Source of the DNA: Octopus sinensis
Lineage: Eukaryota
DNA: 64,000 nt
Assembly: GCF_006345805.1 (NCBI RefSeq)
Contig: NC_043020.1
Coordinates: 25,978,001-26,042,000 of the forward strand
Direction of reading: 5' to 3'
Below are positions 1 to 46,744 of this stretch, piece by piece. How positions within the stretch are numbered: the first letter of the stretch is position 1; each line of letters begins with the position of its first letter. The translations under genes were made by a program, and so were the position numbers. A model generated the notes under the pieces. The model saw only the letters and a program-made list of their open reading frames with translations. It was not told the DNA's origin and did not search any database.

Positions 1-1746
1 TCCATCTGATGCGCTACAATCATAGACAGGGTAGTTAACGAACCTGGCATGGGTGGGGCCCTGATCAACTTGGATCAATCGAAAGCCTTGATAGGGTAGA
101 CCATCGATACTTGGAGGCAGTCCTGAGAGCGGCTGGTTTCGGTCCCGTCTTCCGCGGCTGGATAGCTGCCTTGTACAGAGGCATCCGTTCGGTAATTCGC
201 GTAAATGGACATCTATCGAGACCTTTCGACATTGCACGTTCGGTCCGTCAGGGATGCCCCCTCTCGGCGCTTCTATACGTATTGACTCTTGAGCCACTAC
301 TGCGGAAGCTGGCGACTCTAAGGGGCATCCCGCGAGAATTGGGATGCGGGACGAGCGTGTCTGCATACGCGGACGACGTCACCGTCATAGTGTCTAGCCA
401 CGAGCACATCGAGCTGGTCGGCGAGACACTGAAAAACTACGAAGCGGTGACAGGAGCGAAAATCAACCGGGAAAAGTCAGTGGGCTTGCGACTAGGCACC
501 TGGAGAAGCAAGCCCATGCCGTCCACCAGCGCCTCCGTCGTGGGACGCTGGACCGACGGCCCGGTTGAGTTGCTCGGGGTCTGGTTTGGTCCGGACCTCC
601 AAGTGGAGAAGAACTGGAACGAGATAACGAGTAGGGTGGTCACTCTCGCCCGGCAATGGGCCGAGAGGAAACTGTCCCTAAAAGGTCGAGCGGAGGTGGC
701 GAACACGTACATCGCGTCCGTCATCTACTACCGCCTGACCGTCGTACCTTGTCCCGACCCTACCATCACCAAACTACAACGCATCCTCTTTCGCTTCTTG
801 TGGAAAGGATGCGTCCCGATGGTCAGGCGATCCATTTGCTGTCAACACCCGTTAAAAGGAGGGCTGGGCATGCCGTGGTTGATGATGCAGACACGCGCTG
901 AGACTGCGACATCTCTGGCTCTATGTAGACGACGGTGAACAGGTGTGGTCGCCGTTTGTGAGGCACGCTTACCCGCAGCTCGTCTCCATGACCGAACTGC
1001 AGTCGTGGATCAAAAAGAGGCCGAGGAAGGGCGAATGGCACCGCGAGTGTCGCGTTGCTCTCAAGCAACTCTGCCGTCTGGGTCGACCTTAAGTGACTTC
1101 AACACAACCAAAGCATTCTATAGGGGTTTAGTGGAGGGGAGGTACGACGACGAGCTCGGGGCGAACCTGGACGTCGACGAGGAGTACCTGACCCGCCTGT
1201 TCGGGACGACTTTCGGGCCAGGGCCCATGGACAACTTCCAGAGATCCCTGGCCTGGCAGTGCTACCGAGAAGCGCTACCGTTTCGGGATAAGCTCTACAG
1301 ACACGGCTCGAGAAACACGGGGCCGACCTGCCCGAGATGCGGTCAGAGCGACGAAACCGTTCTGCACGCACTCGTTCAGTGTCCAACAATTTCCGACCTG
1401 TGGGCTTATGTCGAACAACTGCTGTCACGTGTGGGACGAGTCGGTTTATCAGCTGAGTCTATCGTCAATATTGTCACGCCTCCTTCCTTCAACGGGAAGG
1501 AAGAGCTATTTTCATCATCCTTGTGGCTATGGCGAAAGAATGTATCTGGTGGACGCGTCTGAAAGGATTGGAGACAAACACTTTCCTCTCTGGTCAATCT
1601 CTCATCAACTTCTTCAAGTACCACTTGAAAAGAAAGTGAGAGTAGAGAGGCAAGTTTTGTCTAGCGAATGTTTTAAAAAAAGATGGGTGAATGTAGCAAG
1701 AATGGCACGTATGAATGACGAAGCCACTTTGAGCATAGTCCTATGA
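1..1746 (+). pseudogene. LINE ORF2 (reverse transcriptase) broken by about 6 small frameshifts, with no in-frame stops in the stitched path
   Basis: Frame changes near ~20, ~89, ~888, ~1080, ~1495 and ~1632 join ORF-track pieces 111-938, 945-1562 and 1408-1746 into one RT plus zinc-finger protein. Confidence 0.85.
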
Positions 1747-10069: not shown

Positions 10070-10572
10070 TTTCTTGCTTAAAATATTCCAGTGCATATAC
10101 ACAAACTCGAATATTTATACACCGAGTTTCTAAAAGCGTATATTTCAAGAACTTATTGATATTGTATCCTTCAGTTACATTCATAATACATTTACCTAAA
10201 TTGAATCAAAATTCTGGCATGCAGCTTGCTGTACCATATTCCTGCACAAAGAGAATAAATTCGAAGTACAAGAAAATTTCAATTCAATATTTTCACGTTT
10301 TTCTACGAACTAATATTGAACCGCACAACTATATGAGTTTTGTAACATTCCAATTTGTTTTCACTTAGAATTTCACCGATAAAGGATACATCTCTGGTGT
10401 ATTTATGTATCGCATTTCTAAATAAATCCAGTAACTAGACAACAACATGTGTTGAAGTAGATATATTATAAATACTTTTAGTTTAAATTAATTTTCATCT
10501 TGACGTGATTATACAGCGTGGGCCAAGTGTCAAGAACAAAACATTTGACATTTTATTCATATTAAAATTATT

Positions 10573-11173
10573 TATTTCTTTACTACCCACAAGGGGCTAA
10601 ACACAGAGAGGACAAACAAGGACAGAAAAATGGATTAAGTCGATTATATCGACCCCAGTGCGTAACTGGTACTTATTTAATCGACCCCGAAAGGATGAAA
10701 GACAAAGTTGACCTCGGCGGAATTTGAACTCAGAACATAATGGCAGACGAAATACCTATTTCTTTACTACCCACAGAGGGCTAAACACAGAGGGGACAAA
10801 CAAGGACAGAATAACTGATTAAGTCGATTATATCGACCCCAGTGTGTAACTGGTACTTATTTAATCGACCCCCGAAAGGATGAAAGGCAAAGTCGACCTC
10901 GGCGGAATTTGAACACAGAACGTAGTGGCAGACGAAATATCTATTTCTTTACTACCCACAAGAGGCTAAACACAGAAGGGACAAACAAGGACAGACAAAC
11001 GGATTAAGTCGATTATATCGACCCCAGTGCGTAACTGGTACTTATTTAATCGACCCCCGAAAGGATGAAATGCAAAGTCGACCTCGGCGGAATATGAACT
11101 CAGGACGTAACCGCAGACAGATTTCCACTAAGCATTTCGCCCGGCGTGCTAACGTTTCTGCCAGCTCGCCGCC
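10573..11173 (-). mobile_element. Family A SINE trimer: one 5' head plus three ~184-bp body units
   Basis: TATTTCTTTACTACCCAC recurs at 10573, 10757 and 10942. A single head (GCCAGCTCGCCGCC) ends at ~11173. Confidence 0.92.
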
Positions 11174-18515: not shown

Positions 18516-19300
18516 AGGCGGTGAGCTGGCAGAAACGTTAGCACGTCGGGCGAAATGCTTAGCGGTATTTCGTCTGCTGCTACGTTCTGAGTTCAAATTC
18601 AGCTGAGGTCGACTTTGCCTTTCATTCTTTCGGGGTCGATTAAATAAGTACCAGTTACGCACTGGGGTAGATATAATCGGCTTAATCCGTTTGTCTGTCC
18701 TTGTTTGTCCCCTCTGTGTTTAGCCCCTTGTGGGTAGTAAAGAAATAGGTATTTCGTCTGCCGTTACGTTCTGAGTTCAAATTCCGACGAGGTCGACTTT
18801 GCCTTTCATTCTTTCGGGGTCGATTAAATAAATACCAGTTACGCACTGGGGTCGATATAATCGACTTAATCCATTTATCTGTCCTTGTTTGTCCCCTCTG
18901 TGTTTAGCCCCTTGTGGGTAGTAAAGAAATAGGCATTTCGTCTGCTGCTACGTTCTGAGTTCGAATTCCGCCGAGGTCGACTTTGCCTTTCATCCTTTCG
19001 GGGTCGATTAAATAAGTACCAGTTACTCACTGGGGTCGATGTAATCGACTTAATCCGTTTGTCTGTCCTTGTTTGTCCCCTCTGTGTTTAGCCCCTTGTG
19101 GGTAGTAAAGAAATAGGTATTTCGTCTGTCTTTACGTTTTGAGTTCAAATTCCGCCGATGTCGACTTTACCTTTCATCCTTTCAGGGTCGATTAAATAAG
19201 TACCAGCTACGCACTGGGGTTTGATATAATCGACTTAATCCGTTTGTCTATCATTGTTTGTCCCCTCTATTTTTAGCCCCTTGTGGGTAAAAAACAAATA
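18516..19300 (+). mobile_element. Family A SINE tetramer: one head plus four 184-bp body units
   Basis: Head AGGCGGTGAGCTGGCAG at 18516. GG(T/C)ATTTCGTCTG unit starts at 18564, 18748, 18932 and 19116. Confidence 0.93.
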
Positions 19301-19310
19301 AGTAATAATA

Positions 19311-21352: not shown

Positions 21353-21432
<80 letters not shown>

Positions 21433-21629
21433 AATGGATGAATGAATTATCCTTTGTTTACCGTTAACATGGAAATTCAATAAGCAGTTACCAGGGTAGC
21501 AAAAATTCACGCAAGTAACAAGGATGCAGTGACCTATTCAAAGGTAGAAACTCCGGGTTAATGTGCAGTAATCTGTATAGTACAAGTAAATAAATAGAAT
21601 TGAACGCAGTTGCTATTCAAATTCTTTTA

Positions 21630-21712
21630 CTTTCGACATATGTTTCGAAGAGAACATTGGTTTAATTCCAAAGGAATAAACGGTTTAAAATGCAATCTTC
21701 TCATCAGGAAAG
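21630..21712 (-). ncRNA. Solo type I hammerhead ribozyme motif with palindromic stem III
   Basis: Minus strand: CTTTC-CTGATGA-GAAG...CTTC-GAAA-CATATG-TC-GAAAG. Stem I is CTTTC/GAAAG (11 of 13 pairs when extended), stem II opens with G10.1-C11.1, and the triplet is GUC. Predicted cut between 21635 and 21634. Confidence 0.72.
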
Positions 21713-22140
21713 AAAGAGAACCTATCTCAACAAGACATTATAACAATTTTGATGACTGCATAAATGATAAACAGAATGCAATTAAGTATTTAAGAAAAAA
21801 ACGTTAGTAGATTTGACGTCAAAGACAGACCCTAGGAAAAGAAGGGTAAAAGAAATAATAAGTAGAGAACAAATAAAGAGGGATATTTTGGTTGAAAAAA
21901 TGTTCAAAGGCTTAGACGTAGATTTCTCTATTGAAGAAAAGTGCAAGGTGAAGTAATGTTCAAACTATAAAGACTGGTAAAAATTACTTATATGAGCTAA
22001 AGGTATGTTTTTGCCAGTGCTTACATTTGTAAGATCGCTCTATAAGTGTGTTAACAAGGTGATTTTTAGACAAGAGAATATGGAAGAGTTCAGAGTTGCA
22101 AATGGGTTAATCGACCAGAAGAAAATTGTAATTGGGCCCC

Positions 22141-22313
22141 ATCTGCAAGGTCATGTGCTGTTTATCTTGATATGAGATCACCATGTAGCGCACATATGGC
22201 TGTGATGCATGTGCCTAGTGTACCCTTATTAGACGGGTAGTCATGATGGGTATACTGGGTTTCGTATATGTTACCGCCGTGTCACTTCGATGACATGCAC
22301 TGCTCTCTCACTC
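22141..22313 (+). mobile_element. 3' fragment of a non-coding element ending in (AAT)n; homologous to 55465-56010 (-)
   Basis: GTTTATCTTGATATGAGATCA...GCACTGCTCTCTCACTC followed by (AAT)n. Approximately the reverse complement of ~55465-55640. Confidence 0.75.
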
Positions 22314-25372: not shown

Positions 25373-26564
25373 TCATACACGTTTTGTATGTATGAATATT
25401 GTGTTTATTTGATTTACTGCTCTTTACGAAACGACATTTCCTGTGAACATGTCGATAGATTACAAACATACTTCATTGTTATAACCAAACAATACACTAC
25501 AATATAAACATTTACGCAATATATTAGGGACATTTTTCTTTGTACACACCTACACACACACACATATATATATATGCAGATTTTTATTTCCATTAAAATC
25601 ATCATCACAACTATTGCCATAATGAGAACAACAACAGAAATAAAAATAATACTGATAATGATGATGACAGTGAGGTGGATGGATGATGATAATAAAAATA
25701 ATCATCATAACATTATCATTATTATTATCATTATTATTATTATAGTGATTATTATTATTATTATTATTATTATTATTGTTGTTGTTGCAGTTGTTGTTGT
25801 TGTTATTATTATTATCATTATTATTATGTTGTTGTTATTATTATCATCATTATTATTATTGTTGTTGTTGTTATTATTATTATTGTTAGTATTATTATTG
25901 TTGTTGTTATTATTATTATTGTTGTTACTATTGTTGTTATTATTATTATTGTTATTATTATTATTGTTATTATTATTATTATTGTTGTTGTTATAGTTGT
26001 TGTTTATATTATTATTATTATTGTTGTTGTTGTGACTGTTGTTATCATTATCGTTTTATTTGTTATTGATAGCGTCAGTGTCATTGCTGCTATTATCATT
26101 AAAATCATCCTCGTTGTAATACTTATCAATATCTTTTTTATTGCCACCATTATCATCGTAATTGCTTTCCTTGTCCTTGCAGCTGTTGTTGTTATTGTTG
26201 TTGTTGCAGTTGTTGTTGTTGTTATTGTTGTTGTTGCTGTTTTGTTTTAGTTGTTGTTGTTGTTCTTGTTCTTGTTGCTCTTCTCCTTCTGCTTCTTTTT
26301 TCTCCTTCCTCTTCTTCTTATCGTTCTTATTCTCTTTCATCATATTTATTTTTAACCCATACACAAGGCTATACACACGCACACCCACGCACTCACAGCT
26401 ACACACATACATACCCACACATACATACACACTCTCTCATACACAGATACGCATACATATGCAGTCAATCATACACATATATGTAGAATGTGTACATATA
26501 TAGATCTACATATAAGTATGATGGCAGACGCCATATCTATCTATCTATTTACATGGTTGTGTGC

Positions 26565-26636
<72 letters not shown>

Positions 26637-27795
26637 TCATACACGTTTTGTATGTATGAATATTGTGTTTATTTGATTTACTGCTCTTTACGAAACGACA
26701 TTCCTGTGAACATGTCGATAGATTACAAACATACTTCATTGTTATAACCAAACAATACACTACAATATAAACATTTACGCAATATATTAGGGACATTTTT
26801 CTTTGTACACACCTACACACACACACATATATATATATGCAGATTTTTATTTCCATTAAAATCATCATCACAACTATTGCCATAATGAGAACAACAACAG
26901 AAATAAAAATAATACTGATAATGATGATGACAGTGAGGTGGATGGATGATGATAATAAAAATAATCATCATAACATTATCATTATTATTATCATTATTAT
27001 TATTATAGTGATTATTATTATTATTATTATTATTATTATTGTTGTTGTTGCAGTTGTTGTTGTTGTTATTATTATTATCATTATTATTATTGTTGTTGTT
27101 ATTATTATCATCATTATTATTATTGTTGTTGTTATTATTATTATTGTTAGTATTATTATTGTTGTTGTTATTATTATTATTGTTGTTACTATTGTTGTTA
27201 TTATTATTATTGTTATTATTATTATTGTTATTATTATTATTATTGTTGTTGTTATAGTTGTTGTTTATATTATTATTATTATTGTTGTTGTTGTGACTGT
27301 TGTTATCATTATCGTTTTATTTGTTATTGATAGCGTCAGTGTCATTGCTGCTATTATCATTAAAATCATCCTCGTTGTAATACTTATCAATATCTTTTTT
27401 ATTGCCACCATTATCATCGTAATTGCTTTCCTTGTCCTTGCAGCTGTTGTTGTTATTGTTGTTGTTGCTGTTTTGTTTTAGTTGTTGTTGTTGTTCTTGT
27501 TCTTGTTGCTCTTCTCCTTCTGCTTCTTTTTTCTCCTTCCTCTTCTTCTTATCGTTCTTATTCTCTTTCATCATATTTATTTTTAACCCATACACAAGGC
27601 TATACACACGCACACCCACGCACTCACAGCTACACACATACATACCCACACATACATACACACTCTCTCATACACAGATACGCATACATATGCAGTCAAT
27701 CATACACATATATGTAGAATGTGTACATATATAGATCTACATATAAGTATGATGGCAGACGCCATATCTATCTATCTATTTACATGGTTGTGTGC

Positions 27796-27850
<55 letters not shown>
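25345..27850 (+). repeat. Near-identical tandem duplication of ~1.26 kb of low-complexity DNA (2 copies)
   Basis: ATTCATACACGTTTTGTATG at 25371 and 26635 (offset 1264). The offset falls to 1231 after a 33-bp deletion in the (GTT)n tract. Confidence 0.93.
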
Positions 27851-27865
<15 letters not shown>

Positions 27866-28345
27866 GCATAGACGTTTGTATGTATGTATATATATATGCG
27901 TGTGTGTGCGTGTGTGTGTATGTATGTATATATGCATATACGCATGTATGTGTGTGTGTATATTGTCACCTGAATTAATCGACTAAATAGCGTCCAGAAT
28001 GATGGAAGTCAAAAGTTGACCTCTTGGGTATTTGAACGCAAAACTTAAAGTACCGCCGAAGTAAACGCCGCAAGCATTTTTGCCTGGAATCTTAACGATT
28101 CTGCCGACTCAACACTTTGATTGTAATGGTTTCTAAGTTTGCAATAGAAAACCACTTTTCGATATGAGTTTTAGTCGATTAGTTCGAACTCAATCTTTGA
28201 ACAGGAACTTCTTTTATCGATTCCGAAATGATAAAAGTTAAAGTTTACCTTGATGGCTTTTGAACTCAAAACATGGAGCAGGTTAAATAACTCTGCATCA
28301 TTTTCTGTCCAGTTTTCTGTTGATTCAACCAAATTTCGGCGTAAC

Positions 28346-28498: not shown

Positions 28499-29578
28499 TG
28501 ATCGCCCAATATTCTTATCTAAGAAATAACAGTTAAACTTTGTAGCACAAGACCAGCAAATTTCCCTTCAGTAAATCTGTTACACCGTTCTTAATGCTCC
28601 ACTGGTTCTAATTTTAACAATCCTGAATGAATGAATTGCAGAATTCTACACAGTAGGATTTGAACTCAGATTGTAAAGAACCAACGGCAAGAAATGCCAC
28701 TATTCACTTTGTTTGGTGCGATAAGAATTCTGCCAGCTCCCGGCCTTGCTGGACTAGCAAACAATAATAATAACTACTATGGATGCTAATCTGAAATTTT
28801 TAGACTGGGTTGTCGATTAAATCAACACCCAGTATTTGACATCCGCGGGAAAATGAAAGATAATTTTGAATTCGGAGTTTAAATCAGGCCGTGATTACCT
28901 ATATATTTCTGTGGTTGCCAAATATCGGGCTCGATTTATTCAACAAACGTTCATTCCAAATTTGGGGCTTCGTACTTATAGATAAAAACAACTATTATTA
29001 AACGACAGACTATGCTGATGATCTTGCAGATGTTATGTATTCATATACGTAAATTATTAACAAGTGAAACTAATTAGTACATAGGTAATCGTTTTTATAT
29101 GCATATTTTCATTTGGCTTGCTTATTTTTACGCTTTTAGATTTTTGCTGAATTTTTTCTTGGGAACACATTCTCCGTGGAAAATGGCGATTTTGACCTCC
29201 ATATCTAGCATACAGGCTGTCCACTTTTAGTGGTCAATCCTCTAAATTTTGTACGTAAAAAAATTTTTAATCTTCGGATTTTTTGAATATGCTAGGTCAC
29301 TGATTTTTAATTAATTAATATCAATTTCTACCCGTATTTCATTATACATATATATATATACGACGGTTTTCTTTCAATTTCCGTTTACCATATACGCTCA
29401 AATGGCATTGGTCTACTCGAGACCCTATCAGAAGAAACTTCTCCAAGGTTCCACGCGTTGGAGCTGAACTCGGAAACTTGTAGTTAGGAATCAAGCTTCT
29501 TACGACACAACGCTGCACCTGTGTATATATATGTGTGTGTTTGTGTGTGTGTATCTGCGTGTTTGTATCTGTTATATA

Positions 29579-36849: not shown

Positions 36850-37210
36850 TAAGTCGAAGGACTTTTGGAATAATATTCATTTTCTGACGCGAATACAATC
36901 AACTAGTTTAGGTCAGATGCAATGAAACGAGTTTGGCGACGACCAGATGAAGATAATAGCGACAAATGCATCGTACCTACCGTGAAACACGGTGGTGGAA
37001 GGTTTATGTTTTGGGGATGCATGTGTGCGGCTGGTGTGAAGGAGAACATATTTATTGAGAGTAAAATAAACAATGATATATATCGTTGCCATAATGTCGT
37101 AAGTCATTGCTATTATGTCGTAAGTCCTAAACGTTGTTTTTTCAGAAATCGACAAAAGTAGATTCACCATTCTGTAGCAAAACCGTGGTGCTACACTTTG
37201 GCAATATTTG
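36850..37210 (+). mobile_element. Tc1-family transposase fragment (DDE domain start), internally deleted
   Basis: DFWNNI..SD (frameshifted), then KRVWRRPDEDNSDKCIVPTVKHGGGRFMFWGCMCAAGV. PTVKHGGG...WGC is diagnostic of Tc1. Confidence 0.85.
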
Positions 37211-37266
37211 GACATACGACACTTTAACACCATAGTAACGATATAAATATATATATATATATATTA

Positions 37267-37308
<42 letters not shown>

Positions 37309-37309
<1 letters not shown>

Positions 37310-37681
37310 ATTAATCAATATAGGGTGCCAAAAAATTTTGTAGAATTTTTTTTGCCACCAGCGGCCTAGTGGGAAAAAATTAAATAGTCATAGACCATTT
37401 TTAAGTTTAACATCACAATCAAGGAACGGCCATAATAGGCCATTCACCCACTAGAAATAACAGCCAATGCTTCAACCGCAAAATAACATCAATTCCGTAA
37501 ACCAGGAGAAAATTAAAAAACATTTACACTGTAATTTCTTATACGATGCACCGTTTCATCTACTGTTTAATGGTAAACTAACCTGATTAAATTAAATCAA
37601 GCCAATCTTCCATAGGCCCTTAGAATCATCAGTAAGAAATAGCCAAGTCGGAACAGATATTTTCACGAGGCATTTCCGTCC
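37309..37681 (-). repeat. Inverted partial copy (~370 bp) of the 488-bp array unit
   Basis: Reverse complement of the unit from GGACGGAAATGCC through CCCTATATTGATTAATT. Joins the forward array through a shared TCCC (CATTTCCGTCCC|ACTAGG). Confidence 0.95.
37534..37640 (-). ncRNA. Antisense hammerhead ribozyme motif in the inverted unit
   Basis: Plus strand ATTTCTTA-TAC-GATGCACCG-TTTC...TCATCAG-TAAGAAAT is the reverse complement of the array hammerhead. Predicted cut at 37542/37541. Confidence 0.75.
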
Positions 37682-40600
37682 CACTAGGCCGCTGGTGGCA
37701 AAAAAAAATTCTACAAAATTTTTTGCCACCCTATATTGATTAATTATGAATTTTCTGGTTAATTCCGTAATGGAATCGGCGGCTTATATTTATTTGCTGC
37801 CGATAAATTTGGCGCGAGTGCGATGATTTGAAAATTTTAGGTCAGATATTGCCGAGGCAGGGACGGAAATGCCTCGTGAAAATATCTGTTCCGACTTGGC
37901 TATTTCTTACTGATGATTCTAAGGGCCTATGGAAGATTGGCTTGATTTAATTTAATCAGGTTAGTTTACCATTAACAGTAGATGAAACGGTGCATCGTAT
38001 AAGAAATTACAGGGTAAATGTTTTTTAATTTTCTCCTGGTTTACGGAATTGATGTTATTTTGCGGTTGAAGCATTGGCTGTTATTTCTAGTGGGTGAATG
38101 GCCTATTATGGCCGTTCCTTGATTGTGATGTTGAACTTAAAAATGGTCTATGACTATTTAATTTTTTCCCACTAGGCCGCTGGTGGCAAAAAAAAATTCT
38201 ACAAAATTTTTTGCCACCCTATATTGATTAATTATGAATTTTCTGGTTAATCCGTAATGGAATCGGCGGCTTATATTTATTTGCTGCCGATAAATTTGGC
38301 GCGAGTGCGATGATTTGAAATTTAGGTCAGATATTGCCGAGGCAGGGACGGAAATGCCTCGTGAAAATATCTGTTCCGACTTGGCTATTTCTTACTGATG
38401 ATTCTAAGGGCCTATGGAAGATTGGCTTGATTAATTTAATCAGGTTAGTTTACCATTAAACAGTAGATGAAACGGTGCATCGTATAAGAAATTACAGGGT
38501 AAATGTTTTTTAATTTTCCCCTGGTTTACGGAATTGATGTTATTTTGCGGTTGAAGCATTGGCTGTTATTTCTAGTGGGTGAATGGCCTATTATGGCCGT
38601 TCCTTGATTTTGATGTTGAACTTAAAAATGGTCTATGACTATTTAATTTTTTCCCACTAGGCCGCTGGTGGCAAAAAAAAATTGTACAAAATTTTTTGCC
38701 ACCCTATATTGATTAATTATGAATTTTCTGGTTAATTCCGTAATGGAATCGGCGGCTTATATTTATTTGCTGCCGATAAATTTGGCGCGAGTGCGATGAT
38801 TTGAAAATTTTAGGTCAGATATTGCCGAGGCAGGGACGGAATGCCTCGTGAAAATATCTGTTCCGACTTGGCTATTTCTTACTGATGATTCTAAGGGCCT
38901 ATGGAAGATTGGCTTGATTTAATTTAATCAGGTTAGTTTACCATTAAACAGTAGATGAAACGGTGCATCGTATAAGAAATTACAGGGTAAATGTTTTTTA
39001 ATTTTCTCCTGGTTTACGGAATTGATGTTATTTTGCGGTTGAAGCATTGGCTGTTATTTCTAGTGGGTGAATGGCCTATTATGGCCGTTCCTTGATTGTG
39101 ATGTTGAACTTAAAAATGGTCTATGACTATTTAATTTTTTCCCACTAGGCCGCTGGTGGCAAAAAAAATTCTACAAAATTTTTTGCCACCCTATATTGAT
39201 TAATTATGAATTTTCTGGTTAATTCCGTAATGGAATCGGCGGCTTATATTTATTTGCTGCCGATAAATTTGGCGGCGAGTGCGATGATTTGAAAATTTTA
39301 GGTCAGATATTGCCGAGGCAGGGACGGAAATGCCTCGTGAAAATATCTGTTCCGACTTGCTATTTCTTACTGATGATTCTAAGGGCCTATGGAAGATTGG
39401 CTTGATTTAATTTAATCAGGTTAGTTTACCATTAAACAGTAGATGAAACGGTGCATCGTATAAGAAATTACAGGGTAAATGTTTTTTAATTTTCCCCTGT
39501 TTACGGAATTGATGTTATTTTGCGGTTGAAGCATTGTGTTATTTTCTAGTGGGTGAATGGCCTATTATGGCCGTTCCTTGATTTTGATGTTGAACTTAAA
39601 AATGGTCTATGACTATTTAATTTTTTCCCACTAGGCCGCTGGTGGCAAAAAAAATTCTACAAAATTTTTTGCCACCCTATATTGATTAATTATGAATTTT
39701 CTGGTTAATTCCGTAATGGAATCGGCGGCTTATATTTATTTGCTGCCGATAAATTGGCGCGAGTGCGATGATTTGAAAATTTTAGGTCAGATATTGCCGA
39801 GGCAGGGACGGAAATGCCTCGTGAAAATATCTGTTCCGACTTGGCTATTTCTTACTGATGATTCTAAGGGCCTATGGAAGATTGGCTTGATTTAATTTAA
39901 TCAGGTTAGTTTACCATTAAACAGTAGATGAAACGGTGCATCGTATAAGAAATTACAGGGTAAATGTTTTTTAATTTTCCCCTGGTTTACGGAATTGATG
40001 TTATTTTGCGGTTGAAGCATTGGCTGTTATTTTAGTGGGTGAATGGCCTATTATGGCCGTGCTTGATTGTGATGTTGAACTTAAAAATGGTCTATGACTA
40101 TTTAATTTTTTCCCACTAGGCCGCTGGTGGCAAAAAAAATTCTACAAAATTTTTTGCCACCCTATATTGATTAATTATGAATTTTCTGGTTAATTCCGTA
40201 ATGGAATCGGCGCTATTTATTTGCTGCCGATAAATTTGGCGCGAGTGCGATGATTTCAAAATTTTAGGTCAGATATTGCCGAGGCAGGGACGGAAATGCC
40301 TCGTGAAAATATCTGTTCCGACTTGGCTATTTCTTACTGATGATTCTAAGGGCCTATGGAAGATTGGCTTGATTTAATTTAATCAGGTTAGTTTACCATT
40401 AAACAGTAGATGAAATGGTTGCATCGTATAAGAAATTACAGGGTAAATGTTTTTTAATTTTCCCCTGGTTTACGGAATGATTGTTTTTTTGCGGTTGAAG
40501 CATTGGCTGTTATTTCTAGTGGGTGAATGGCCTATTATGGCCGTTCCTTGATTTTGATGTTGAACTTAAAAATGGTCTATGACTATTTAATTTTTTCCCA

Positions 40601-43600
40601 CTAGGCCGCTGGTGGCAAAAAAAAATTGTACAAAATTTTTTTGCCCCCTAATATTGATTAATTATGAATTTTCTGGTTAATTCCGTAATGGAATCGGCGG
40701 CTTTATTTATTTGCTGCCGATAAATTGTGGCGCGAGTGCGATGATTTCAAAATTTTAGGTCAGATATTGCCGATGGCAGGGACTGGAAATGCCTCGTGAA
40801 AATATCTGTTCCGACTTGGCTATTTCTTACTGATGATTCTAAGGGCCTATGGAAGATTGGCTTGATTTAATTTAATCAGGTTAGTTTACCATTAAACAGT
40901 AGATGAAACGGTGCATCGTATAAGAAATTACAGGGTAAATGTTTTTTAAATTTTCCCCTGGTTTACGGAATTGATGTTTTTTGCGGTTGAAGCATTGGCT
41001 GTTATTTCTAGTGGGTGAATGGCCTATTATGGCCGTTCCTTGATTGTGATGTTGAACTTAAAAATGGTCTATGACTATTTATTTTTTTCCCACTAGGCCG
41101 CTGGTGGCAAAAAAAATTGTACAAAATTTTTTGCCACCCTATATTAATTAATTATGAATTTTCTGGTTAATTCCGTAATGGAATCGGCGGCTTATATTTA
41201 TTTGCTGCCGATAAATTTGGCGCGAGTGCGATGATTTGAAAATTTTAGGTCAGATATTGCCGAGGCAGGGACGGAAATGCCTCGTGAAAATATCTGTTCC
41301 GACTTGGCTATTTCTTACTGATGATTCTAAGGCCTATGGAAGATTGGCTTGATTTAATTTAATCAGGTTAGTTTACCATTAAACAGTAGATGAAACGGTG
41401 CATCGTATAAGAAATTACAGTGTAAATGTTTTTTAATTTTCTCCTGGTTTACGGAATTGATGTTATTTTGCGGTTGAAGCTTTTGGCTGTTATTTCTAGT
41501 GGGTGAATGGCCTATTATGGCCGTTCCTTGATTGTGATGTTGAACTTAAAAATGGTCTATGACTATTTAATTTTTTCCCACTAGGCCGCTGGTGGCAAAA
41601 AAAAATTGTACAAAATTTTTTGGCACCCTATATTGATTAATTATGAATTTTCTGGTTAATTCCGTAATGGAATCGGCGGCTTATATTTATTTGCTGCCGA
41701 TAAATTTGGCGCGAGTGCGATGATTTGAAAATTTTAGGTCAGATATTGCCGAGGCAGGGACAGAAATGCCTCGTGAAAATATCTGTTCCGACTTGGCTAT
41801 TTCTTACTGATGATTCTAAGGGCCTATGGAGATTGGCTTGATTTAATTTAATCAGGTTAGTTTACCATTAAACAGTAGATGAAACGGTGCATCGTATAAG
41901 AAATTACAGGGTAAATGTTTTTTAATTTTCTCCTGGTTTACGGAATTGATGTTATTTTGCGGTTGAAGCATGGGCTGTTATTTCTAGTGGGTGAATGGCC
42001 TATTATGGCCGTTCCTTGATTGTGATGTTGAACTTAAAAATGGTCTATGACTATTTAATTTTTTCCCACTAGGCCGCTGGTGGCAAAAAAAAATTCTACA
42101 AAATTTTTTGCCACCCTATATTGATTAATTATGAATTTTCTGGTTAATTCCGTAATGGAATCGGCGGCTTATATTTATTTGCTGCCGATAAATTTGGCGC
42201 GAGTGCGATGATTTCAAAATTTTAGGTCAGATATTGCCGAGGCAGGGACGGAAATGCCTCGTGAAAATATCTGTTCCGACTTGGCTATTTCTTACTGATG
42301 ATTCTAAGGGCCTATGGAAGATTGGCTTGATTTAATTTAATCAGGTTAGTTTACCATTAAACAGTAGATGAAACGGTGCATCGTATAAGAAATTACAGGG
42401 TAAATGTTTTTTTAAGTTTCCCCTGGTTTACGGAATTGATGTTATTTTGCGGTTGAAGCATTGGCTGTTATTTCTAGTGGGTGAATGGCCTATTATGGCC
42501 GTTCCTTGATTTTGATGTTGAACTTAAAAATGGTCTATGACTATTTAATTTTTTCCCACTAGGCCGCTGGTGGCAAAAAAAAATTGTACAAAATTTTTTG
42601 CCACCCTATATTGATTAATTATGAATTTTCTGGTTAATTCCGTAATGGAATCGGCGGCTTATATTTATTTGCTGCCGATAAATTTGGCGCGAGTGCGATG
42701 ATTTCAAAATTTTAGGTCAGATATTGCCGAGGCAGGGACGGAAATGCCTCGTGAAAATATCTGTTCCGACTTGGCTATTTCTTACTGATGATTCTAAGGG
42801 CCTATGGAAGATTGGCTTGATTTAATTTAATCAGGTTAGTTTACCATTAAACAGTAGATGAAACGGTGCATCGTATAAGAAATTACAGGGTAAATGTTTT
42901 TTAATTTTCCCCTGGTTTACGGAATTGATGTTATTTTGCGGTTGAAGCATTGGCTGTTATTTCTAGTGGGTGAATGGCCTATTATGGCCGTTCCTTGATT
43001 GTGATGTTGAACTTAAAAATGGTCTATGACTATTTAATTTTTTCCCACTAGGCCGCTGGTGGCAAAAAAAAATTGTACAAAATTTTTTGCCACCCTATAT
43101 TAATTAATTATGAATTTTCTGGTTAATTCCGTAATGGAATCGGCGGCTTATATTATTTGCTGCCGATAAATTGGCGCGAGTGCGATGATTTGAAAATTTT
43201 AGGTCAGATATTGCCGAGGCAGGGACGGAAATGCCTCGTGAAAATATCTGTTCCGACTTGGCTATTTCTTACTGATGATTCTAAGGGCCTATGGAAGATT
43301 GGCTTGATTTAATTTAATCAGGTTAGTTTACCATTAAACAGTAGATGAACGGTGCATCGTATAAGAAATTACAGTGTAAATGTTTTTTAATTTTCTCCTG
43401 GTTTACGGAATTGATGTTATTTTGCGGTTGAAGCATTGGCTGTTATTTCTAGTGGGTGAATGGCCTATTATGGCCGTTCCTTGATTGTGATGTTGAACTT
43501 AAAAATGGTCTATGACTATTTAATTTTTTCCCACTAGGCCGCTGGTGGCAAAAAAAAATTGTACAAAATTTTTTGCCACCCTATATTGATTAATTATGAA

Positions 43601-44469
43601 TTTTCTGGTTAATTCCGTAATGGAATCGGCGGCTTATATTTATTTGCTGCCGATAAATTTGGCGCGAGTGCGATGATTTGAAAATTTTAGGTCAGATATT
43701 GCCGAGGCAGGGACAGAAATGCCTCGTGAAAATATCTGTTCCGACTTGGCTATTTCTTACTGATGATTCTAAGGGCCTATGAAGATTGGCTTGATTTAAT
43801 TTAATCAGGTTAGTTTACCATTAAACAGTAGATGAAACGGTGCATCGTATAAGAAATTACAGGGTAAATGTTTTTTAATTTTCTCCTGGTTTACGGAATT
43901 GATGTTATTTTGCGGTTGAAGCATTGGCTGTTATTTCTAGTGGGTGAATGGCCTATTATGGCCGTTCCTTGATTGTGATGTTGAACTTAAAAATGGTCTA
44001 TGACTATTTAATTTTTTCCCACTAGGCCGCTGGTGGCAAAAAAAAATTCTACAAAATTTTTTGCCACCCTATATTGATTAATTATGAATTTTCTGGTTAA
44101 TTCCGTAATGGAATCGGCGGCTTATATTTATTTGCTGCCGATAAATTTGGCGCGAGTGCGATGATTTGAAAATTTTAGGTCAGATATTGCCGAGGCAGGG
44201 ACGGAAATGCCTCGTGAAAATATCTGTTCTGACTTGGCTATTTCTTACTGATGATTCTAAGGGCCTATGGAAGATTGGCTTGATTTAATTTAATCAGGTT
44301 AGTTTACCATTAAACAGTAGATGAAACGGTGCATCGTATAAGAAATTACAGGGTAAATGTTTCTTAATTTTCTCCTGGTTTACGGAATTGATGTTATTTT
44401 GCGGTTGAAGCATTGGCTGTTATTTCTAGTGGGTGAATGGCCTATTATGGCCGTTCCTTGATTGTGATG
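37681..44469 (+). repeat. Tandem array of 14 units of ~488 bp (last one truncated), each with a hammerhead motif: candidate non-LTR retrozyme array
   Basis: CCACTAGGCCGCTGG starts at 37681, 38169, 38654, 39142, 39628, 40113, 40598, 41090, 41578, 42066, 42556, 43045, 43531 and 44019. Units differ by few SNPs and small indels. The array plus its inverted copy is flanked by (TA)n on both sides. Confidence 0.97.
37902..38007 (+). ncRNA. Type I hammerhead ribozyme motif (unit 1; repeated in each array unit)
   Basis: Stem I ATTTCTTA 37902-37909 / TAAGAAAT 38000-38007; CTGATGA 37910-37916; stem II TCTA 37918-37921 / TAGA 37979-37982 enclosing a longer hairpin; GAAA 37984-37987; stem III ACGGT-GC-ATCGT; triplet GTA 37997-37999. 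Confidence 0.8.
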
Positions 44470-44843
44470 ATATATATATATATATATAAACGGCAGTTTG
44501 TCTGTGTGTCTGTTAGGTTGTACCCTCACCCTGACCACGGCTTTCAACCGATTCTGATGAAACTTGATACGCACATAGCCCAATGTCATAATTCAAAACT
44601 AACGCAGCGAAAATTTTGAAAAGTTCCCCCAGTTCTGAAAAAAATCGATAAATTCGACATGGGGTCGAGAATCAGAAACACAAACCACAGACTGTCTAGG
44701 GGACGCAACTCGACCTTTTAACTCTCAAAAAAATTTACCATAATTTTTTTCCCATTTTTTTGCTATTTTTTGGCTATAACTCTCTAAAAATGCTTTATAG
44801 TTATTGCCCTTACAAACCCGAGCAACGCCGGGTGATACTGCTA

Positions 44844-44844
<1 letters not shown>
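44470..44844 (+). mobile_element. Non-autonomous Helitron-like element
   Basis: 3' hairpin CCCGAGCAACGCCGGG (44817-44832) followed by GATACTGCTAG|T. The 5' end is (TA)nAAA then TGTCTGTGTGTCTG and ACCGATTCTGATGAAACTTG. No 5' TC is visible. Confidence 0.7.
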
Positions 44845-44879
<35 letters not shown>

Positions 44880-45847: not shown

Positions 45848-46240
45848 TTTTACTCTTTTGCTCTTTTACTTGTTTCAGTCATTGGACTGCGGCCATGCTG
45901 GAGAACCGCCTTTAGTCGAGCAAATCGACCCCAGGACTAATTCTTTGTAAGCCTAGTACTTATTCGATCGGTCTCTTTTGCAGAACCGCTAAGTTACGTG
46001 GACGTAAACACACCGACATCGGTTGTCAAGTGATGTTGGGGGTACAAACACAGACACAAAAACATACACATATACATATACATACATACGACGAGCTTCT
46101 TTCAGATCCGTCTACCAAATCCACTGACAAGGATTTGGTCGGCCTGAGGCTATAGTAGAAGACAATTGTCCAAGGTGCCACGCAGTGGGACTGAACCGGG
46201 AACTATGTGGCTAGTAAGCAAGCTACCAACTACACAGCCA
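45848..46240 (-). mobile_element. tRNA-derived SINE, family B
   Basis: (TACTCTTT)n tail, CGGCCATGCTGGAG, AACCCGATGTCGG-type body, internal (CA/TA)n and head GGGACTGAACC (B-box reverse complement). Confidence 0.88.
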
Positions 46241-46400
46241 ATATATATATGCATACATACATACATACATACATACATACATACATACATACATACATAC
46301 ATACATACATACATACATACATACATACACACACAGACACATATATATCTGTGTTTGCGTGTGTATTTGTACAGACATACATAAATACACTCCAATTGTA

Positions 46401-46522
46401 TGACGACGTGTTTTGACGACGTGTTTTTTGACGACGTGTTTTCTGACGACGTGTTTTTTGATGATGTGCTTTTTGACGTGTTTTTTGACGACGTGTTTTA
46501 TGACGACGTGTTTTTGACGACG
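46401..46522. repeat. Minisatellite, ~9 copies of TGACGACGTGTTTT(T)
   Basis: Directly visible, unit 12-16 bp. Confidence 0.92.
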
Positions 46523-46744
46523 CTGAATATCGAAGAATAAGTTTATAAGCTCTTATTATCCCCAACAACATGCAATTCTCGCTGATAAGAATAAAGTTTC
46601 TAAGATGAATAAAGAAATTGGATAGACTACTTTGGTCCAACGGCAGAATGCCTGCTATGTTTGCAACAGATGTGGGTTTGAGTCCCATAAACGGCCTTTG
46701 AATATTTTCTACTCTATATGTATATGTGTGTATGAGTATGCATC

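What the first reader, a model, noticed from the sequence alone, without database searches (positions are those of the whole stretch)
37681..44469. Tandem array of 14 hammerhead-ribozyme units: candidate cephalopod non-LTR retrozyme producing a ~488-nt self-cleaved RNA
Seen: each ~488-bp unit has a type I hammerhead layout, ATTTCTTA-CTGATGA-[stem II]-GAAA-CGGTGCATCG-TA^TAAGAAAT, with a perfect 8-bp stem I. Predicted cuts follow 37999, 38484, 38972, 39460, 39945, 40428, 40920, 41407, 41896, 42385, 42875, 43361, 43849 and 44338, giving 483-492-nt monomers. Twelve cores match the consensus, unit 6 has a variant stem III (GAAATGGTTGCATCGTA) and unit 12 lacks one A of GAAA. Established: metazoan non-LTR retrozymes (newt satellite 2, schistosome Sm-alpha, cricket, coral and mussel repeats) are tandem repeats with one type I hammerhead per unit, and several yield circular RNAs. 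Inference: this is such an element. The unit seems long for the class as I recall it, and I know of no description in octopus, but I cannot check either point. It would otherwise be annotated as plain satellite DNA.
Basis: partly seen in the sequence, partly recalled or inferred. Interest (0 to 1): 0.92.

Follow-up and report, generated by a model that had tools for sequence, protein, structure and literature searches.

The report
Hammerhead-ribozyme repeat array in octopus DNA
A 7-kb block of 488-bp repeats in an octopus-like genome carries one hammerhead-ribozyme-like motif per unit and looks like a non-coding retroelement copied in by Penelope-type machinery: a new member of a known class, with self-cleavage still untested.

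Summary
A 488-bp tandem array (13.9 units, 97% alike) spans 37679-44469, and all 14 predicted cut sites reproduce exactly. Each unit has a type I hammerhead layout. Twelve copies are identical in the core, copy 6 has a variant helix III, and copy 12 has lost an A of GAAA.

- An inverted, 5'-truncated copy (37307-37682) abuts the array head-to-head.
- The whole insertion sits inside a (TA)n microsatellite. Tandem plus inverted copy in (TA)n is the published signature of Penelope-like element (PLE) integration.
- Positions 10.1/11.1 are U opposite U, not the near-invariant G-C. No Rfam hammerhead model matches, even at E<=10.

The motif is not chance. Of 719 permuted-core decoys run on the real window, 717 gave no locus and 2 gave one; the true core gave 16. 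Two of those 16 are unrelated elements at 21.7 kb and 29.0 kb. The 29.0 kb one repeats the U/U feature.

Best reading: a PLE-mobilised non-LTR retrozyme whose hammerhead probably works as a dimer, since helix III is palindromic. Catalysis, expression and circular RNA are untested. The 488-bp unit is not unusually long: published range 51-972 bp, and the cricket pDo500 satellite is about 500 bp. This is a new member of a known kind, of moderate interest.

The parts
37241..37306 (.). (TA)n microsatellite, left flank of the insertion
   Evidence: TRF row 37241-37309; sequence. Only 3.7% of background positions abut >=10 bp of (TA)n.
37307..37682 (-). Inverted, 5'-truncated copy of the unit (0.77 unit). 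It carries a complete hammerhead-like domain on the minus strand at 37640->37534, with the predicted cut after 37542.
   Evidence: Inverted-repeat arms 37327-37595/38431-38699 (96%) and 37567-37682/37860-37975 (100%). Descriptor hit on the minus strand. 1-5 substitutions from most array units, closest to unit 12.
37679..37682 (.). Head-to-head junction. TCCC is shared by the 5' end of the inverted copy and the 5' end of the direct array (4-nt microhomology).
   Evidence: Read directly...gcatttccgTCCCactaggc...
37679..44469 (+). Direct tandem array, 13.9 units of about 488 bp, 36.6% GC, no ORF longer than 41 aa
37902..38007 (+). Hammerhead domain of unit 1, as the exemplar. Helix I 5' strand 37902-37909; CUGAUGA 37910-37916; helix II 37917-37983 (U/U, then UCUA/UAGA, then a long imperfect hairpin); GAAA 37984-37987; helix III 37988-37997 (CGG-UGCA-UCG); U16.1 A17 37998-37999; cut after 37999; helix I 3' strand 38000-38007. 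The other 13 domains start at 38387, 38874, 39362, 39847, 40329, 40822, 41310, 41799, 42287, 42777, 43264, 43752 and 44240.
38973..39460 (+). One full predicted monomer between two cut sites (488 nt). Helix I closes the whole molecule in the predicted fold.
   Evidence: Plus-strand MFE -150.9 kcal/mol, z = -5.9, no shuffle as stable. Minus strand -108.8, z = -5.0. Circular fold.
40329..40436 (+). Copy 6: variant helix III (GAAAUGGUUGCAUCGUA). 15.2 becomes U (a wobble with G16.2) and there is one extra U.
43264..43369 (+). Copy 12: core defect, GAA instead of GAAA. Predicted inactive.
   Evidence: (not found by the descriptor).
44470..44488 (.). (TA)n microsatellite, right flank of the insertion
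   Evidence: Sequence.

Best explanation
This is a non-autonomous, non-coding retroelement of the non-LTR retrozyme kind. It was integrated into a (TA)n microsatellite by the reverse transcriptase/GIY-YIG endonuclease of a Penelope-like element (PLE).

Proposed cycle, with the basis of each step:
1. The array is transcribed as a multimer. The promoter is unknown (inferred).
2. The hammerhead in each unit cuts after GUA every ~488 nt. It most likely acts as a dimer, in which two neighbouring units pair their palindromic helix III segments, ACGGUGCAUCGU (inferred from structure and energies).
3. Each monomer has a 5'-OH and a 2',3'-cyclic phosphate. The 8-bp helix I holds these ends side by side, so an RtcB-type tRNA ligase can close the circle (inferred from the published model).
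4. A PLE enzyme cuts both strands of an AT-rich target and primes reverse transcription from both. Copying a circular or multimeric template yields a more-than-unit cDNA on one strand and a short inverted copy on the other, joined through 4 nt of microhomology. The footprint is shown; the mechanism is inferred from published PLE biochemistry.
5. The array was later reshaped at the DNA level, since shared variants recur at a 4-unit lag. This rests on a weak signal.
For: Array and motif:
- One motif per unit, with cut sites exactly as listed.
- The motif is far above chance: 0 of 300 simulated windows reach the observed helix I length. Permuted-core decoys on the real sequence give 0.003 loci per decoy against 16 for the true core.
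- Two unrelated elements in the same window carry the same architecture with different helix sequences. They share a long helix II, a fully palindromic helix III, C15.2-G16.2 and GUH.
- The element at 21.7 kb is recognised by Rfam Hammerhead_1 at 18.7 bits, E = 0.027. The element at 29.0 kb repeats the U/U at 10.1/11.1.

PLE footprint:
- Inverted 5'-truncated copy abutting the array, and (TA)n on both sides. Chance of both ends abutting (TA)n is about 1e-3.
- This matches the published description of PLE insertions: partial tandems, an inverted 5'-truncated copy upstream, and (TA)n bias (Craig et al. 2021, PMC8557442).
- A purified PLE protein cleaves and extends both strands at AT-rich DNA (Frangieh et al. 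2024, PMC11167929).

Class features:
- GC 36.6%, no ORF above 41 aa, and an RNA fold with z = -5.9 closed by helix I.
- These match the retrozyme description in Cervera & de la Pena 2020 (PMC7229834).
- The array also meets the operational criteria of Li et al. 2026: at least two consecutive complete motifs and MFE below -5.

Host and ribozyme mode:
- The host is Octopus-like, and O. vulgaris has young PLE families (PMC13282606).
- A palindromic helix III is the published hallmark of dimer-acting PLE and newt-type hammerheads (PMC4209133). The predicted dimer duplex is -19.5 kcal/mol.
Against: - U/U replaces G10.1-C11.1, which Cervera & de la Pena 2014 call highly conserved even in minimal PLE hammerheads.
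- No Rfam hammerhead model matches the array.
- PLE-type minimal hammerheads cleave poorly in vitro.
- The monomer hammerhead fold lies 3.4 kcal/mol above a competitor that pairs core UGAUG with CAUCG of helix III.
- No second locus of this family was seen in the rest of the window or in 66 kb of other cephalopod DNA. Dispersal, the mark of mobility, is therefore not shown.
- No autonomous PLE with a matching pseudo-LTR could be examined.
- Units differ too little to show selection on the motif.
- Shared variants at a 4-unit lag point to DNA-level amplification as well.
- No expression data are available.
Confidence: 0.7

Rival explanations
1. Fossil or dead ribozyme. The repeat descends from a PLE pseudo-LTR or an old retrozyme, but the hammerhead is no longer (or never was) catalytically competent because of U/U at 10.1/11.1. 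The array is now ordinary satellite DNA, grown by unequal crossing-over.
For: - G10.1-C11.1 is not met, and Rfam is silent.
- Shared variants recur at a 4-unit lag: U8~U12 differ by 1 substitution and U9~U13 by 3 substitutions and 0 indels.
- No other locus of the family was found.
- Variants fall in the motif about as often as elsewhere.
Against: - Thirteen of 14 direct copies plus the inverted copy keep every other core position and a perfect 8-bp helix I.
- The same U/U variant recurs in an unrelated element with all three helices different. That is not expected for a random disabling mutation.
- The array is young (97% identity), and its insertion footprint is intact.
Confidence: 0.22
2. 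Chance resemblance. This is a plain satellite whose unit happens to contain CUGAUGA, GAAA and complementary flanks.
For: Rfam finds nothing. The sequence is AT-rich and hairpin-rich.
Against: - 0 of 300 simulated window-equivalents reach helix I >= 8.
- 717 of 719 permuted-core decoys give no locus on the real window, against 16 for the true core.
- Helix III is palindromic, and the PLE-type insertion architecture is independent of the motif.
Confidence: 0.02
3. Assembly artefact. The array and the inverted copy are a mis-assembly or collapse of long reads, so copy number and the head-to-head junction are not real.
For: - Many single-base homopolymer indels between units.
- The literature notes that PLE tandem/inverted structures are often mis-assembled (Craig et al. 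2021).
Against: - Units carry distinct, ordered substitution patterns.
- The junction has clean 4-nt microhomology, and both outer ends meet (TA)n cleanly.
- An artefact would not create the motif itself.
Confidence: 0.04

Closest known systems
Metazoan non-LTR retrozymes (Acropora, Mytilus galloprovincialis, axolotl; Cervera & de la Pena 2020, PMC7229834)
   Same: Tandem non-coding repeats of a few hundred bp with one type I hammerhead per unit. GC is below 50%, there is no LTR/PBS/PPT, and the monomer RNA is highly self-paired and closed by helix I. A mollusc precedent exists (mussel, 350-390 bp).
   Different: - The hammerhead has a 66-68-nt helix II and U/U at 10.1/11.1.
- It lacks the recognisable loop 1-loop 2 contacts of canonical type I motifs.
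- The unit of 488 bp is above the 150-450 bp first quoted, though inside the 51-972 bp of Li et al. 2026.
- Expression and circular RNA are not shown here.
- The papers searched contain no cephalopod example.
Hammerheads of Penelope-like element pseudo-LTRs, and PLE insertion architecture (Cervera & de la Pena 2014 PMC4209133; Craig et al. 2021 PMC8557442; Frangieh et al. 2024 PMC11167929; Li et al. 2026 preprint)
   Same: - Longer-than-usual helix II and a palindromic helix III, which implies action as a dimer.
- Tandem copies, an inverted 5'-truncated copy upstream, and insertion into (TA)n.
   Different: - No RT/GIY-YIG ORF in the element or anywhere in the window.
- Helix I is long (8 bp, against 4-5 in PLE minimal motifs).
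- Helix III is a real 4-bp hairpin, not absent.
- G10.1-C11.1, conserved in PLE minimal hammerheads, is replaced by U/U.
- Similarity to a specific PLE pseudo-LTR could not be tested.
pDo500 satellite of Dolichopoda cave crickets (PMC2837043)
   Same: Tandem repeat of about 500 bp with one embedded hammerhead. A double-hammerhead (dimeric) structure has been proposed for it.
   Different: - The pDo500 hammerhead is compact (49 nt) and cleaves in vitro.
- pDo500 makes up about 5% of the genome as classical satellite.
- The abundance of the octopus family is unknown.
Newt satellite 2 and ASBVd hammerheads
   Same: Type I layout, and a weak helix III with a palindromic loop. Efficient cleavage needs two tandem copies.
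   Different: They have a short helix II and a canonical G10.1-C11.1 pair.
Rfam Hammerhead_1 (RF00163)
   Same: Helix order I-II-III, CUGAUGA, GAAAC and the GUH site.
   Different: No alignment is reported at E<=10. The 21.7-kb neighbour, which has G10.1-C11.1, scores 18.7 bits against a gathering score of 34.

Membership tests
Hammerhead ribozyme, type I | 5' core box C3-U4-G5-A6-N7-G8-A9 | tested here: met
   CTGATGA is present in all 14 direct copies and in the inverted copy.
Hammerhead ribozyme, type I | 3' core box G12-A13-A14, the A15.1-U16.1 pair, and H17 at the cut site | tested here: met
   GAAA...UA^ in 13 of 14 direct copies and in the inverted copy. Copy 12 has GAA. The site triplet is GUA.
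Hammerhead ribozyme, type I | Three helices around the core, with helix I open-ended | tested here: met
   Helix I is 8 bp perfect. Helix II is UCUA/UAGA plus a long hairpin. Helix III is 4 bp plus a UGCA loop.
Hammerhead ribozyme, type I | G10.1-C11.1 pair closing helix II | tested here: not met
   U opposite U in every copy. The pair is described as highly conserved in PMC4209133.
Hammerhead ribozyme, type I | Score at or above Rfam's gathering threshold for a hammerhead model | tested here: not met
   No hammerhead hit at the gathering threshold, at E<=10 in 8 kb, or at E<=10 in 141 nt. Control: the 21.7-kb motif scores 18.7 bits.
Hammerhead ribozyme, type I | Site-specific self-cleavage | not testable with these tools
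   Needs in vitro transcription of monomer and dimer constructs.
Non-LTR retrozyme | [quoted passage not shown] | tested here: met
   13.9 units of 488 bp with 13 complete motifs. The size lies inside the 51-972 bp range.
Non-LTR retrozyme | Non-coding, GC below 50%, no LTR/PBS/PPT | tested here: met
   GC is 36.6%, the longest ORF is 41 aa, and there is no tRNA-like sequence.
Non-LTR retrozyme | Monomer RNA predicted to be stable and highly self-paired | tested here: met
   MFE -150.9 kcal/mol, z = -5.9, and 0 of 100 shuffles as stable.
Non-LTR retrozyme | Dispersed copies at several loci (mobility) | tested here: inconclusive
   No other copy in the window, in 66 kb of cephalopod loci, or in metagenome and viral scans. 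No octopus genome could be searched by DNA.
Non-LTR retrozyme | Accumulation as linear and circular RNA of unit length | not testable with these tools
PLE-mobilised element (PLE insertion signature) | Tandem or partial-tandem copies with an adjacent inverted 5'-truncated copy | tested here: met
   Inverted copy 37307-37682 abuts the array with 4-nt microhomology. Published description.
PLE-mobilised element (PLE insertion signature) | Insertion into AT-rich or (TA)n target | tested here: met
   (TA)n on both sides. Base rate is 3.7% per end.
PLE-mobilised element (PLE insertion signature) | Sequence relationship to the pseudo-LTR of an autonomous PLE in the same genome | not testable with these tools
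   There is no PLE ORF in the window, and no octopus PLE sequence was on hand.
PLE minimal hammerhead (Cervera & de la Pena 2014) | Palindromic 15.2-16.2 and loop 3; enlarged helix II | tested here: met
   CGGUGCAUCG is self-complementary with two G-U pairs, and the predicted dimer duplex is -19.5 kcal/mol. Helix II is 66-68 nt.
PLE minimal hammerhead (Cervera & de la Pena 2014) | One extra nucleotide between A9 and 10.1, followed by G10.1-C11.1 | tested here: not met
   A U follows A9, but it faces another U before G12. There is no G-C pair.

The most novel reading that the evidence does not exclude
Octopus genomes may carry a hammerhead subclass that standard models cannot see. Its features are U opposite U at 10.1/11.1, a 50-70-nt helix II, a palindromic helix III and a GUA site. 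It is found here in two unrelated elements: the array, and the motif at 29010-29084. If it cleaves, a position treated as nearly invariant is dispensable in dimer-acting hammerheads. Current Rfam and descriptor-based censuses would then be undercounting retrozymes and PLE-derived ribozymes in cephalopods. This locus would also be a clean one-event footprint tying a retrozyme to PLE-type two-strand priming.
Probability: 0.35. Interest if true: 0.6.

Novelty: new member of a known kind. Interest (0 to 1): 0.47.

Why it matters
Standard pipelines would label this block as plain satellite DNA. If it is a working retrozyme, three things follow:
- It adds cephalopods to the animals that make abundant ribozyme-derived circular RNAs.
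- It gives a very legible genomic footprint (tandem array, inverted truncated copy, (TA)n target). This supports the recent proposal that animal retrozymes are non-autonomous passengers of Penelope-like elements.
- It offers a natural test of whether the G10.1-C11.1 pair is really required in dimer-acting hammerheads.

If the ribozyme is dead, the locus is simply a young PLE-derived satellite.

Tried and rejected
- Rfam at gathering threshold on the whole window, and at E<=10 on 8 kb and on 141 nt: no hammerhead or any other ribozyme family on either strand of the array. The weak Afu_514, mir-297 and TtnuCD23 hits are noise.
- Looking for more copies of the unit: sensitive BLAST of the unit against the rest of the window found nothing. 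Exact-pattern scans of metagenome and viral contigs gave 0 hits.
- Exact look-up of the two longest unit ORFs (34 and 39 aa) in the public gene-position index: not on record.
- An apparent 'Ctr copper transporter' ORF at 46230-46688 was meant to anchor an orthologous locus. It proved to be low-complexity repeat translation and is not on record.
- The LINE RT ORF search gave only ~50%-identical relatives. The loci fetched from it (L001, unknown ENA sample; L002, cuttlefish) share no DNA repeats with the window and hold no convincing hammerhead. Cluster look-up of the closest short hits gave no organism.
- The O. vulgaris rhodopsin locus L003 confirmed the host genus through shared repeats, but it holds no hammerhead or unit copy.
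- Search for a PLE ORF in the window (Pfam on the largest ORFs, GIY-YIG/YxDD regex): only a LINE RT. A 'YADDL' string over the 29.0-kb CUGAUGA is within chance expectation and sits in a broken frame.
- tRNA scan: none.
- Selection within the array: units are too similar (97%) to say anything.
- Lunse et al. 2017 on dimeric PLE hammerheads is not held in the library. A literature search for activity data on 10.1-11.1 variants found nothing usable.


Full report
**1. The observation**

Tandem Repeats Finder reports one array at 37679-44469, with period 488, 13.9 copies, 97% matches and score 12991.

Every unit reads ATTTCTTA-CTGATGA-[66-68 nt]-GAAA-CGGTGCATCG-TA^TAAGAAAT. Copy 6 (40329-40436) has GAAATGGTTGCATCGTA. 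Copy 12 (43264-43369) has lost one A of GAAA. The description is therefore accurate.

Many differences between units are one-base indels in homopolymer runs. They may be long-read errors, so exact lengths are soft.

**2.

- **Inverted copy.** The element begins at 37307, not at 37681. Bases 37307-37682 are the reverse complement of unit positions equivalent to 37860-38235, at 96-100% identity. This inverted, 5'-truncated copy is 376 bp long and carries a fifteenth complete motif on the minus strand. It meets the direct array head-to-head, and the two share TCCC at 37679-37682.
- **(TA)n target.** The composite insertion (37307-44469) lies inside a (TA)n microsatellite, at 37241-37306 on the left and 44470-44488 on the right. 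Only 3.7% of background positions abut 10 bp or more of (TA)n, so both ends doing so is about a 1e-3 event.
- **U/U at 10.1/11.1.** The base after CUGAUGA and the base before GAAA are both U. The pair closing helix II is therefore U/U, not G-C.

**3. Is the hammerhead motif real?**

Rfam says nothing. There is no hit at gathering thresholds in the whole window, none at E<=10 in 8 kb, and none at E<=10 in a 141-nt slice around one motif.

I therefore wrote a type I descriptor: CUGANGA; helix II of at least 4 bp, allowing one bulge or one mismatch at its base; GAAA; a palindromic or hairpin helix III; UH; then helix I. I calibrated it in two ways.

- In 300 Markov-1 sequences, each equal to one window on both strands, matches with helix I >= 5 occurred 0.01 times per window. 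None reached 8 bp.
- On the real window I replaced the core by all 719 permutations of the same letters. 717 gave no locus and 2 gave one. The true core gave 16.

Fourteen of those 16 are the array family: 13 direct copies plus the inverted one.

The other two lie in sequence with no detectable similarity to the unit.

- **21.7 kb, minus strand, 21713->21629:** CUUUC-CUGAUGA-GAAGA…UCUUC-GAAA-CAUAUG-UC^GAAAG. The core is canonical, including G10.1-C11.1. Rfam Hammerhead_1 aligns it at 18.7 bits, E = 0.027 in a 141-nt search, with a 50-nt loop insertion. That is below the gathering score of 34.
- **29.0 kb, plus strand, 29010-29084:** CUAUG-CUGAUGA-U-CUUG…CAAG-U-GAAA-CUAAUUAG-UA^CAUAG. It has the same U/U and the same GUA site as the array. 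Rfam does not detect it either.

All three families share a long helix II (44-68 nt between the core boxes), a fully palindromic helix III, C15.2-G16.2 and GUH, while every helix sequence differs. Because the descriptor demands pairing, this is not independent covariation evidence. The excess over both nulls, however, is decisive against chance.

**4. Structure and energetics**

A monomer cut at both sites folds to -150.9 kcal/mol, with z = -5.9 against dinucleotide shuffles. Helix I closes the whole multibranched molecule. The minus strand folds to -108.8, z = -5.0. The difference is largely compositional, because the plus strand is G+U rich.

Within the 107-nt domain, the three-way hammerhead fold (-25.8) is 3.4 kcal/mol less stable than a competitor. 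That competitor pairs core UGAUG with CAUCG of helix III (-29.2). Two copies of ACGGUGCAUCGU can instead form a 12-bp intermolecular helix III of -19.5 kcal/mol.

This is the pattern described for newt, ASBVd and PLE hammerheads. They are active as dimers in multimeric transcripts and silent in the excised monomer (PMC4209133; PMC6155905).

**5. What the architecture says**

PLE insertions are described as partial tandems, often with an inverted 5'-truncated copy directly upstream, and with a bias for (TA)n in the Neptune and Naiad clades (Craig et al. 2021). A purified PLE protein cleaves and extends both DNA strands at AT-rich sites and starts reverse transcription internally on the RNA (Frangieh et al. 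2024). The locus shows all of these: a tandem array, an inverted truncated copy, a microhomology junction and a (TA)n target.

The two 3' ends fall at different unit positions. The array ends at …GATTGTGATG, and the inverted copy at …GATTAATTAT, 106 nt further along the unit. That is expected if both were primed on a circular or multimeric template.

The unit has no coding capacity: the longest ORF is 41 aa. No RT/GIY-YIG ORF exists in the window, so the element must be non-autonomous.

This matches the non-LTR retrozyme definition: tandem type I hammerhead repeats, GC below 50%, no LTR/PBS/PPT, and a self-paired RNA (Cervera & de la Pena 2020). It also matches the recent proposal that such elements derive from PLE pseudo-LTRs (Li et al. 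2026 preprint).

Substitution patterns among units show a weak 4-unit periodicity: U8~U12 differ by 1 substitution, U9~U13 by 3, and U7~U11 by 4. So either some DNA-level duplication occurred, or the template was a heterogeneous multimer.

**6. Host**

The window shares several interspersed repeats at 85-93% DNA identity with a 24-kb Octopus vulgaris locus fetched through rhodopsin. It shares none with a cuttlefish locus or with an unidentified ENA contig. The window's LINE RT is 52% identical to a cuttlefish protein. 'Octopus' is thus supported at genus-like level.

O. vulgaris is reported to have 31 young PLE families (PMC13282606). The papers searched contain no link between hammerheads or retrozymes and octopus or cephalopods.

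**7. Unit length**

Retrozyme consensus lengths of 51-972 bp are reported. The hammerhead-bearing pDo500 satellite of cave crickets is about 500 bp. The 488-bp unit is therefore not an outlier.

**8. Verdict**

Most likely (0.7) this is a PLE-mobilised non-LTR retrozyme array with a divergent, dimer-type hammerhead.

The main rival (0.22) is that the ribozyme is a fossil and the array is now ordinary satellite DNA. The missing G10.1-C11.1 pair and the known low in vitro activity of PLE-type motifs keep that rival alive. The recurrence of U/U in an unrelated element argues against it. Chance (0.02) and assembly artefact (0.04) are minor.

It is a new member of a known kind. Two modest points of added interest are a hammerhead variant invisible to Rfam and an unusually clean PLE footprint. 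Self-cleavage, transcription, circularisation and genomic dispersal remain untested.

Noticed in passing
window 21629-21713 (minus strand); element about 21441-22313: A second, unrelated hammerhead: CUUUC-CUGAUGA-GAAGA…(42-nt loop)…UCUUC-GAAA-CAUAUG-UC^GAAAG. Its core is canonical, including G10.1-C11.1, and helix III is minimal and palindromic. Rfam Hammerhead_1 gives 18.7 bits, below the gathering score of 34. It lies about 200 nt from an element end that abuts (TA)n at 21432, as expected for a 5'-truncated PLE or a solo retrozyme monomer.
   Followed up: partly
window 29010-29084 (plus strand); element ends near 29350 at a short (TA)n: A third hammerhead-like motif: CUAUG-CUGAUGA-U-CUUG…CAAG-U-GAAA-CUAAUUAG-UA^CAUAG. 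It has the same U/U at 10.1/11.1 and the same GUA site as the array, but unrelated sequence. Rfam does not detect it. The CUGAUGA overlaps an in-frame 'YADDL' string in a broken frame, which is within chance expectation.
   Followed up: partly
window 44489-44836: A ~350-bp element lies directly right of the array, itself bounded by (TA)n on both sides (44470-44488 and 44837-44879). The same microsatellite seems to have been hit twice. It contains CTGATGAAAC at 44554 but no hammerhead fold. The family was not identified.
   Followed up: no
window 111-1562 (plus strand): The 3' part of a LINE-type retrotransposon ORF: RVT_1 (E = 7e-14), then one stop, then zf-RVT (E = 7e-8). The closest named relative is a cuttlefish (Acanthosepion pharaonis) protein at 52% identity. 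It is not a Penelope-like element.
   Followed up: partly
window 10569-11118 and 18564-19304: Two short tandem arrays (3 and 4 copies) of a ~185-bp SINE-like unit, in opposite orientations. They are 89-93% identical to a copy in the Octopus vulgaris rhodopsin locus (L003 24058-24260). This was the basis for calling the host Octopus-like.
   Followed up: partly
window 36943-37059 (plus strand): The translation reads PDEDNSDKCIVPTVKHGGGRFMFWGCMCAAGVKENIFIE. By eye this looks like a Tc1/mariner transposase fragment just left of the (TA)n target. Pfam on the 39 residues found nothing.
   Followed up: partly
window about 26184-26636 and 27445-27897: TRF lists identical sets of small repeats offset by 1231 bp. 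For example, 26401-26481 and 27632-27712 have the same consensus units. This suggests a ~1.2-kb local duplication.
   Followed up: no
window 46230-46688 (minus strand): A 152-aa ORF gives a weak Pfam Ctr copper-transporter hit (E = 1e-4). The ORF is a translation of microsatellite and 15-bp tandem repeat sequence (MYVC and KTRRQ runs). It is a false gene.
   Followed up: yes
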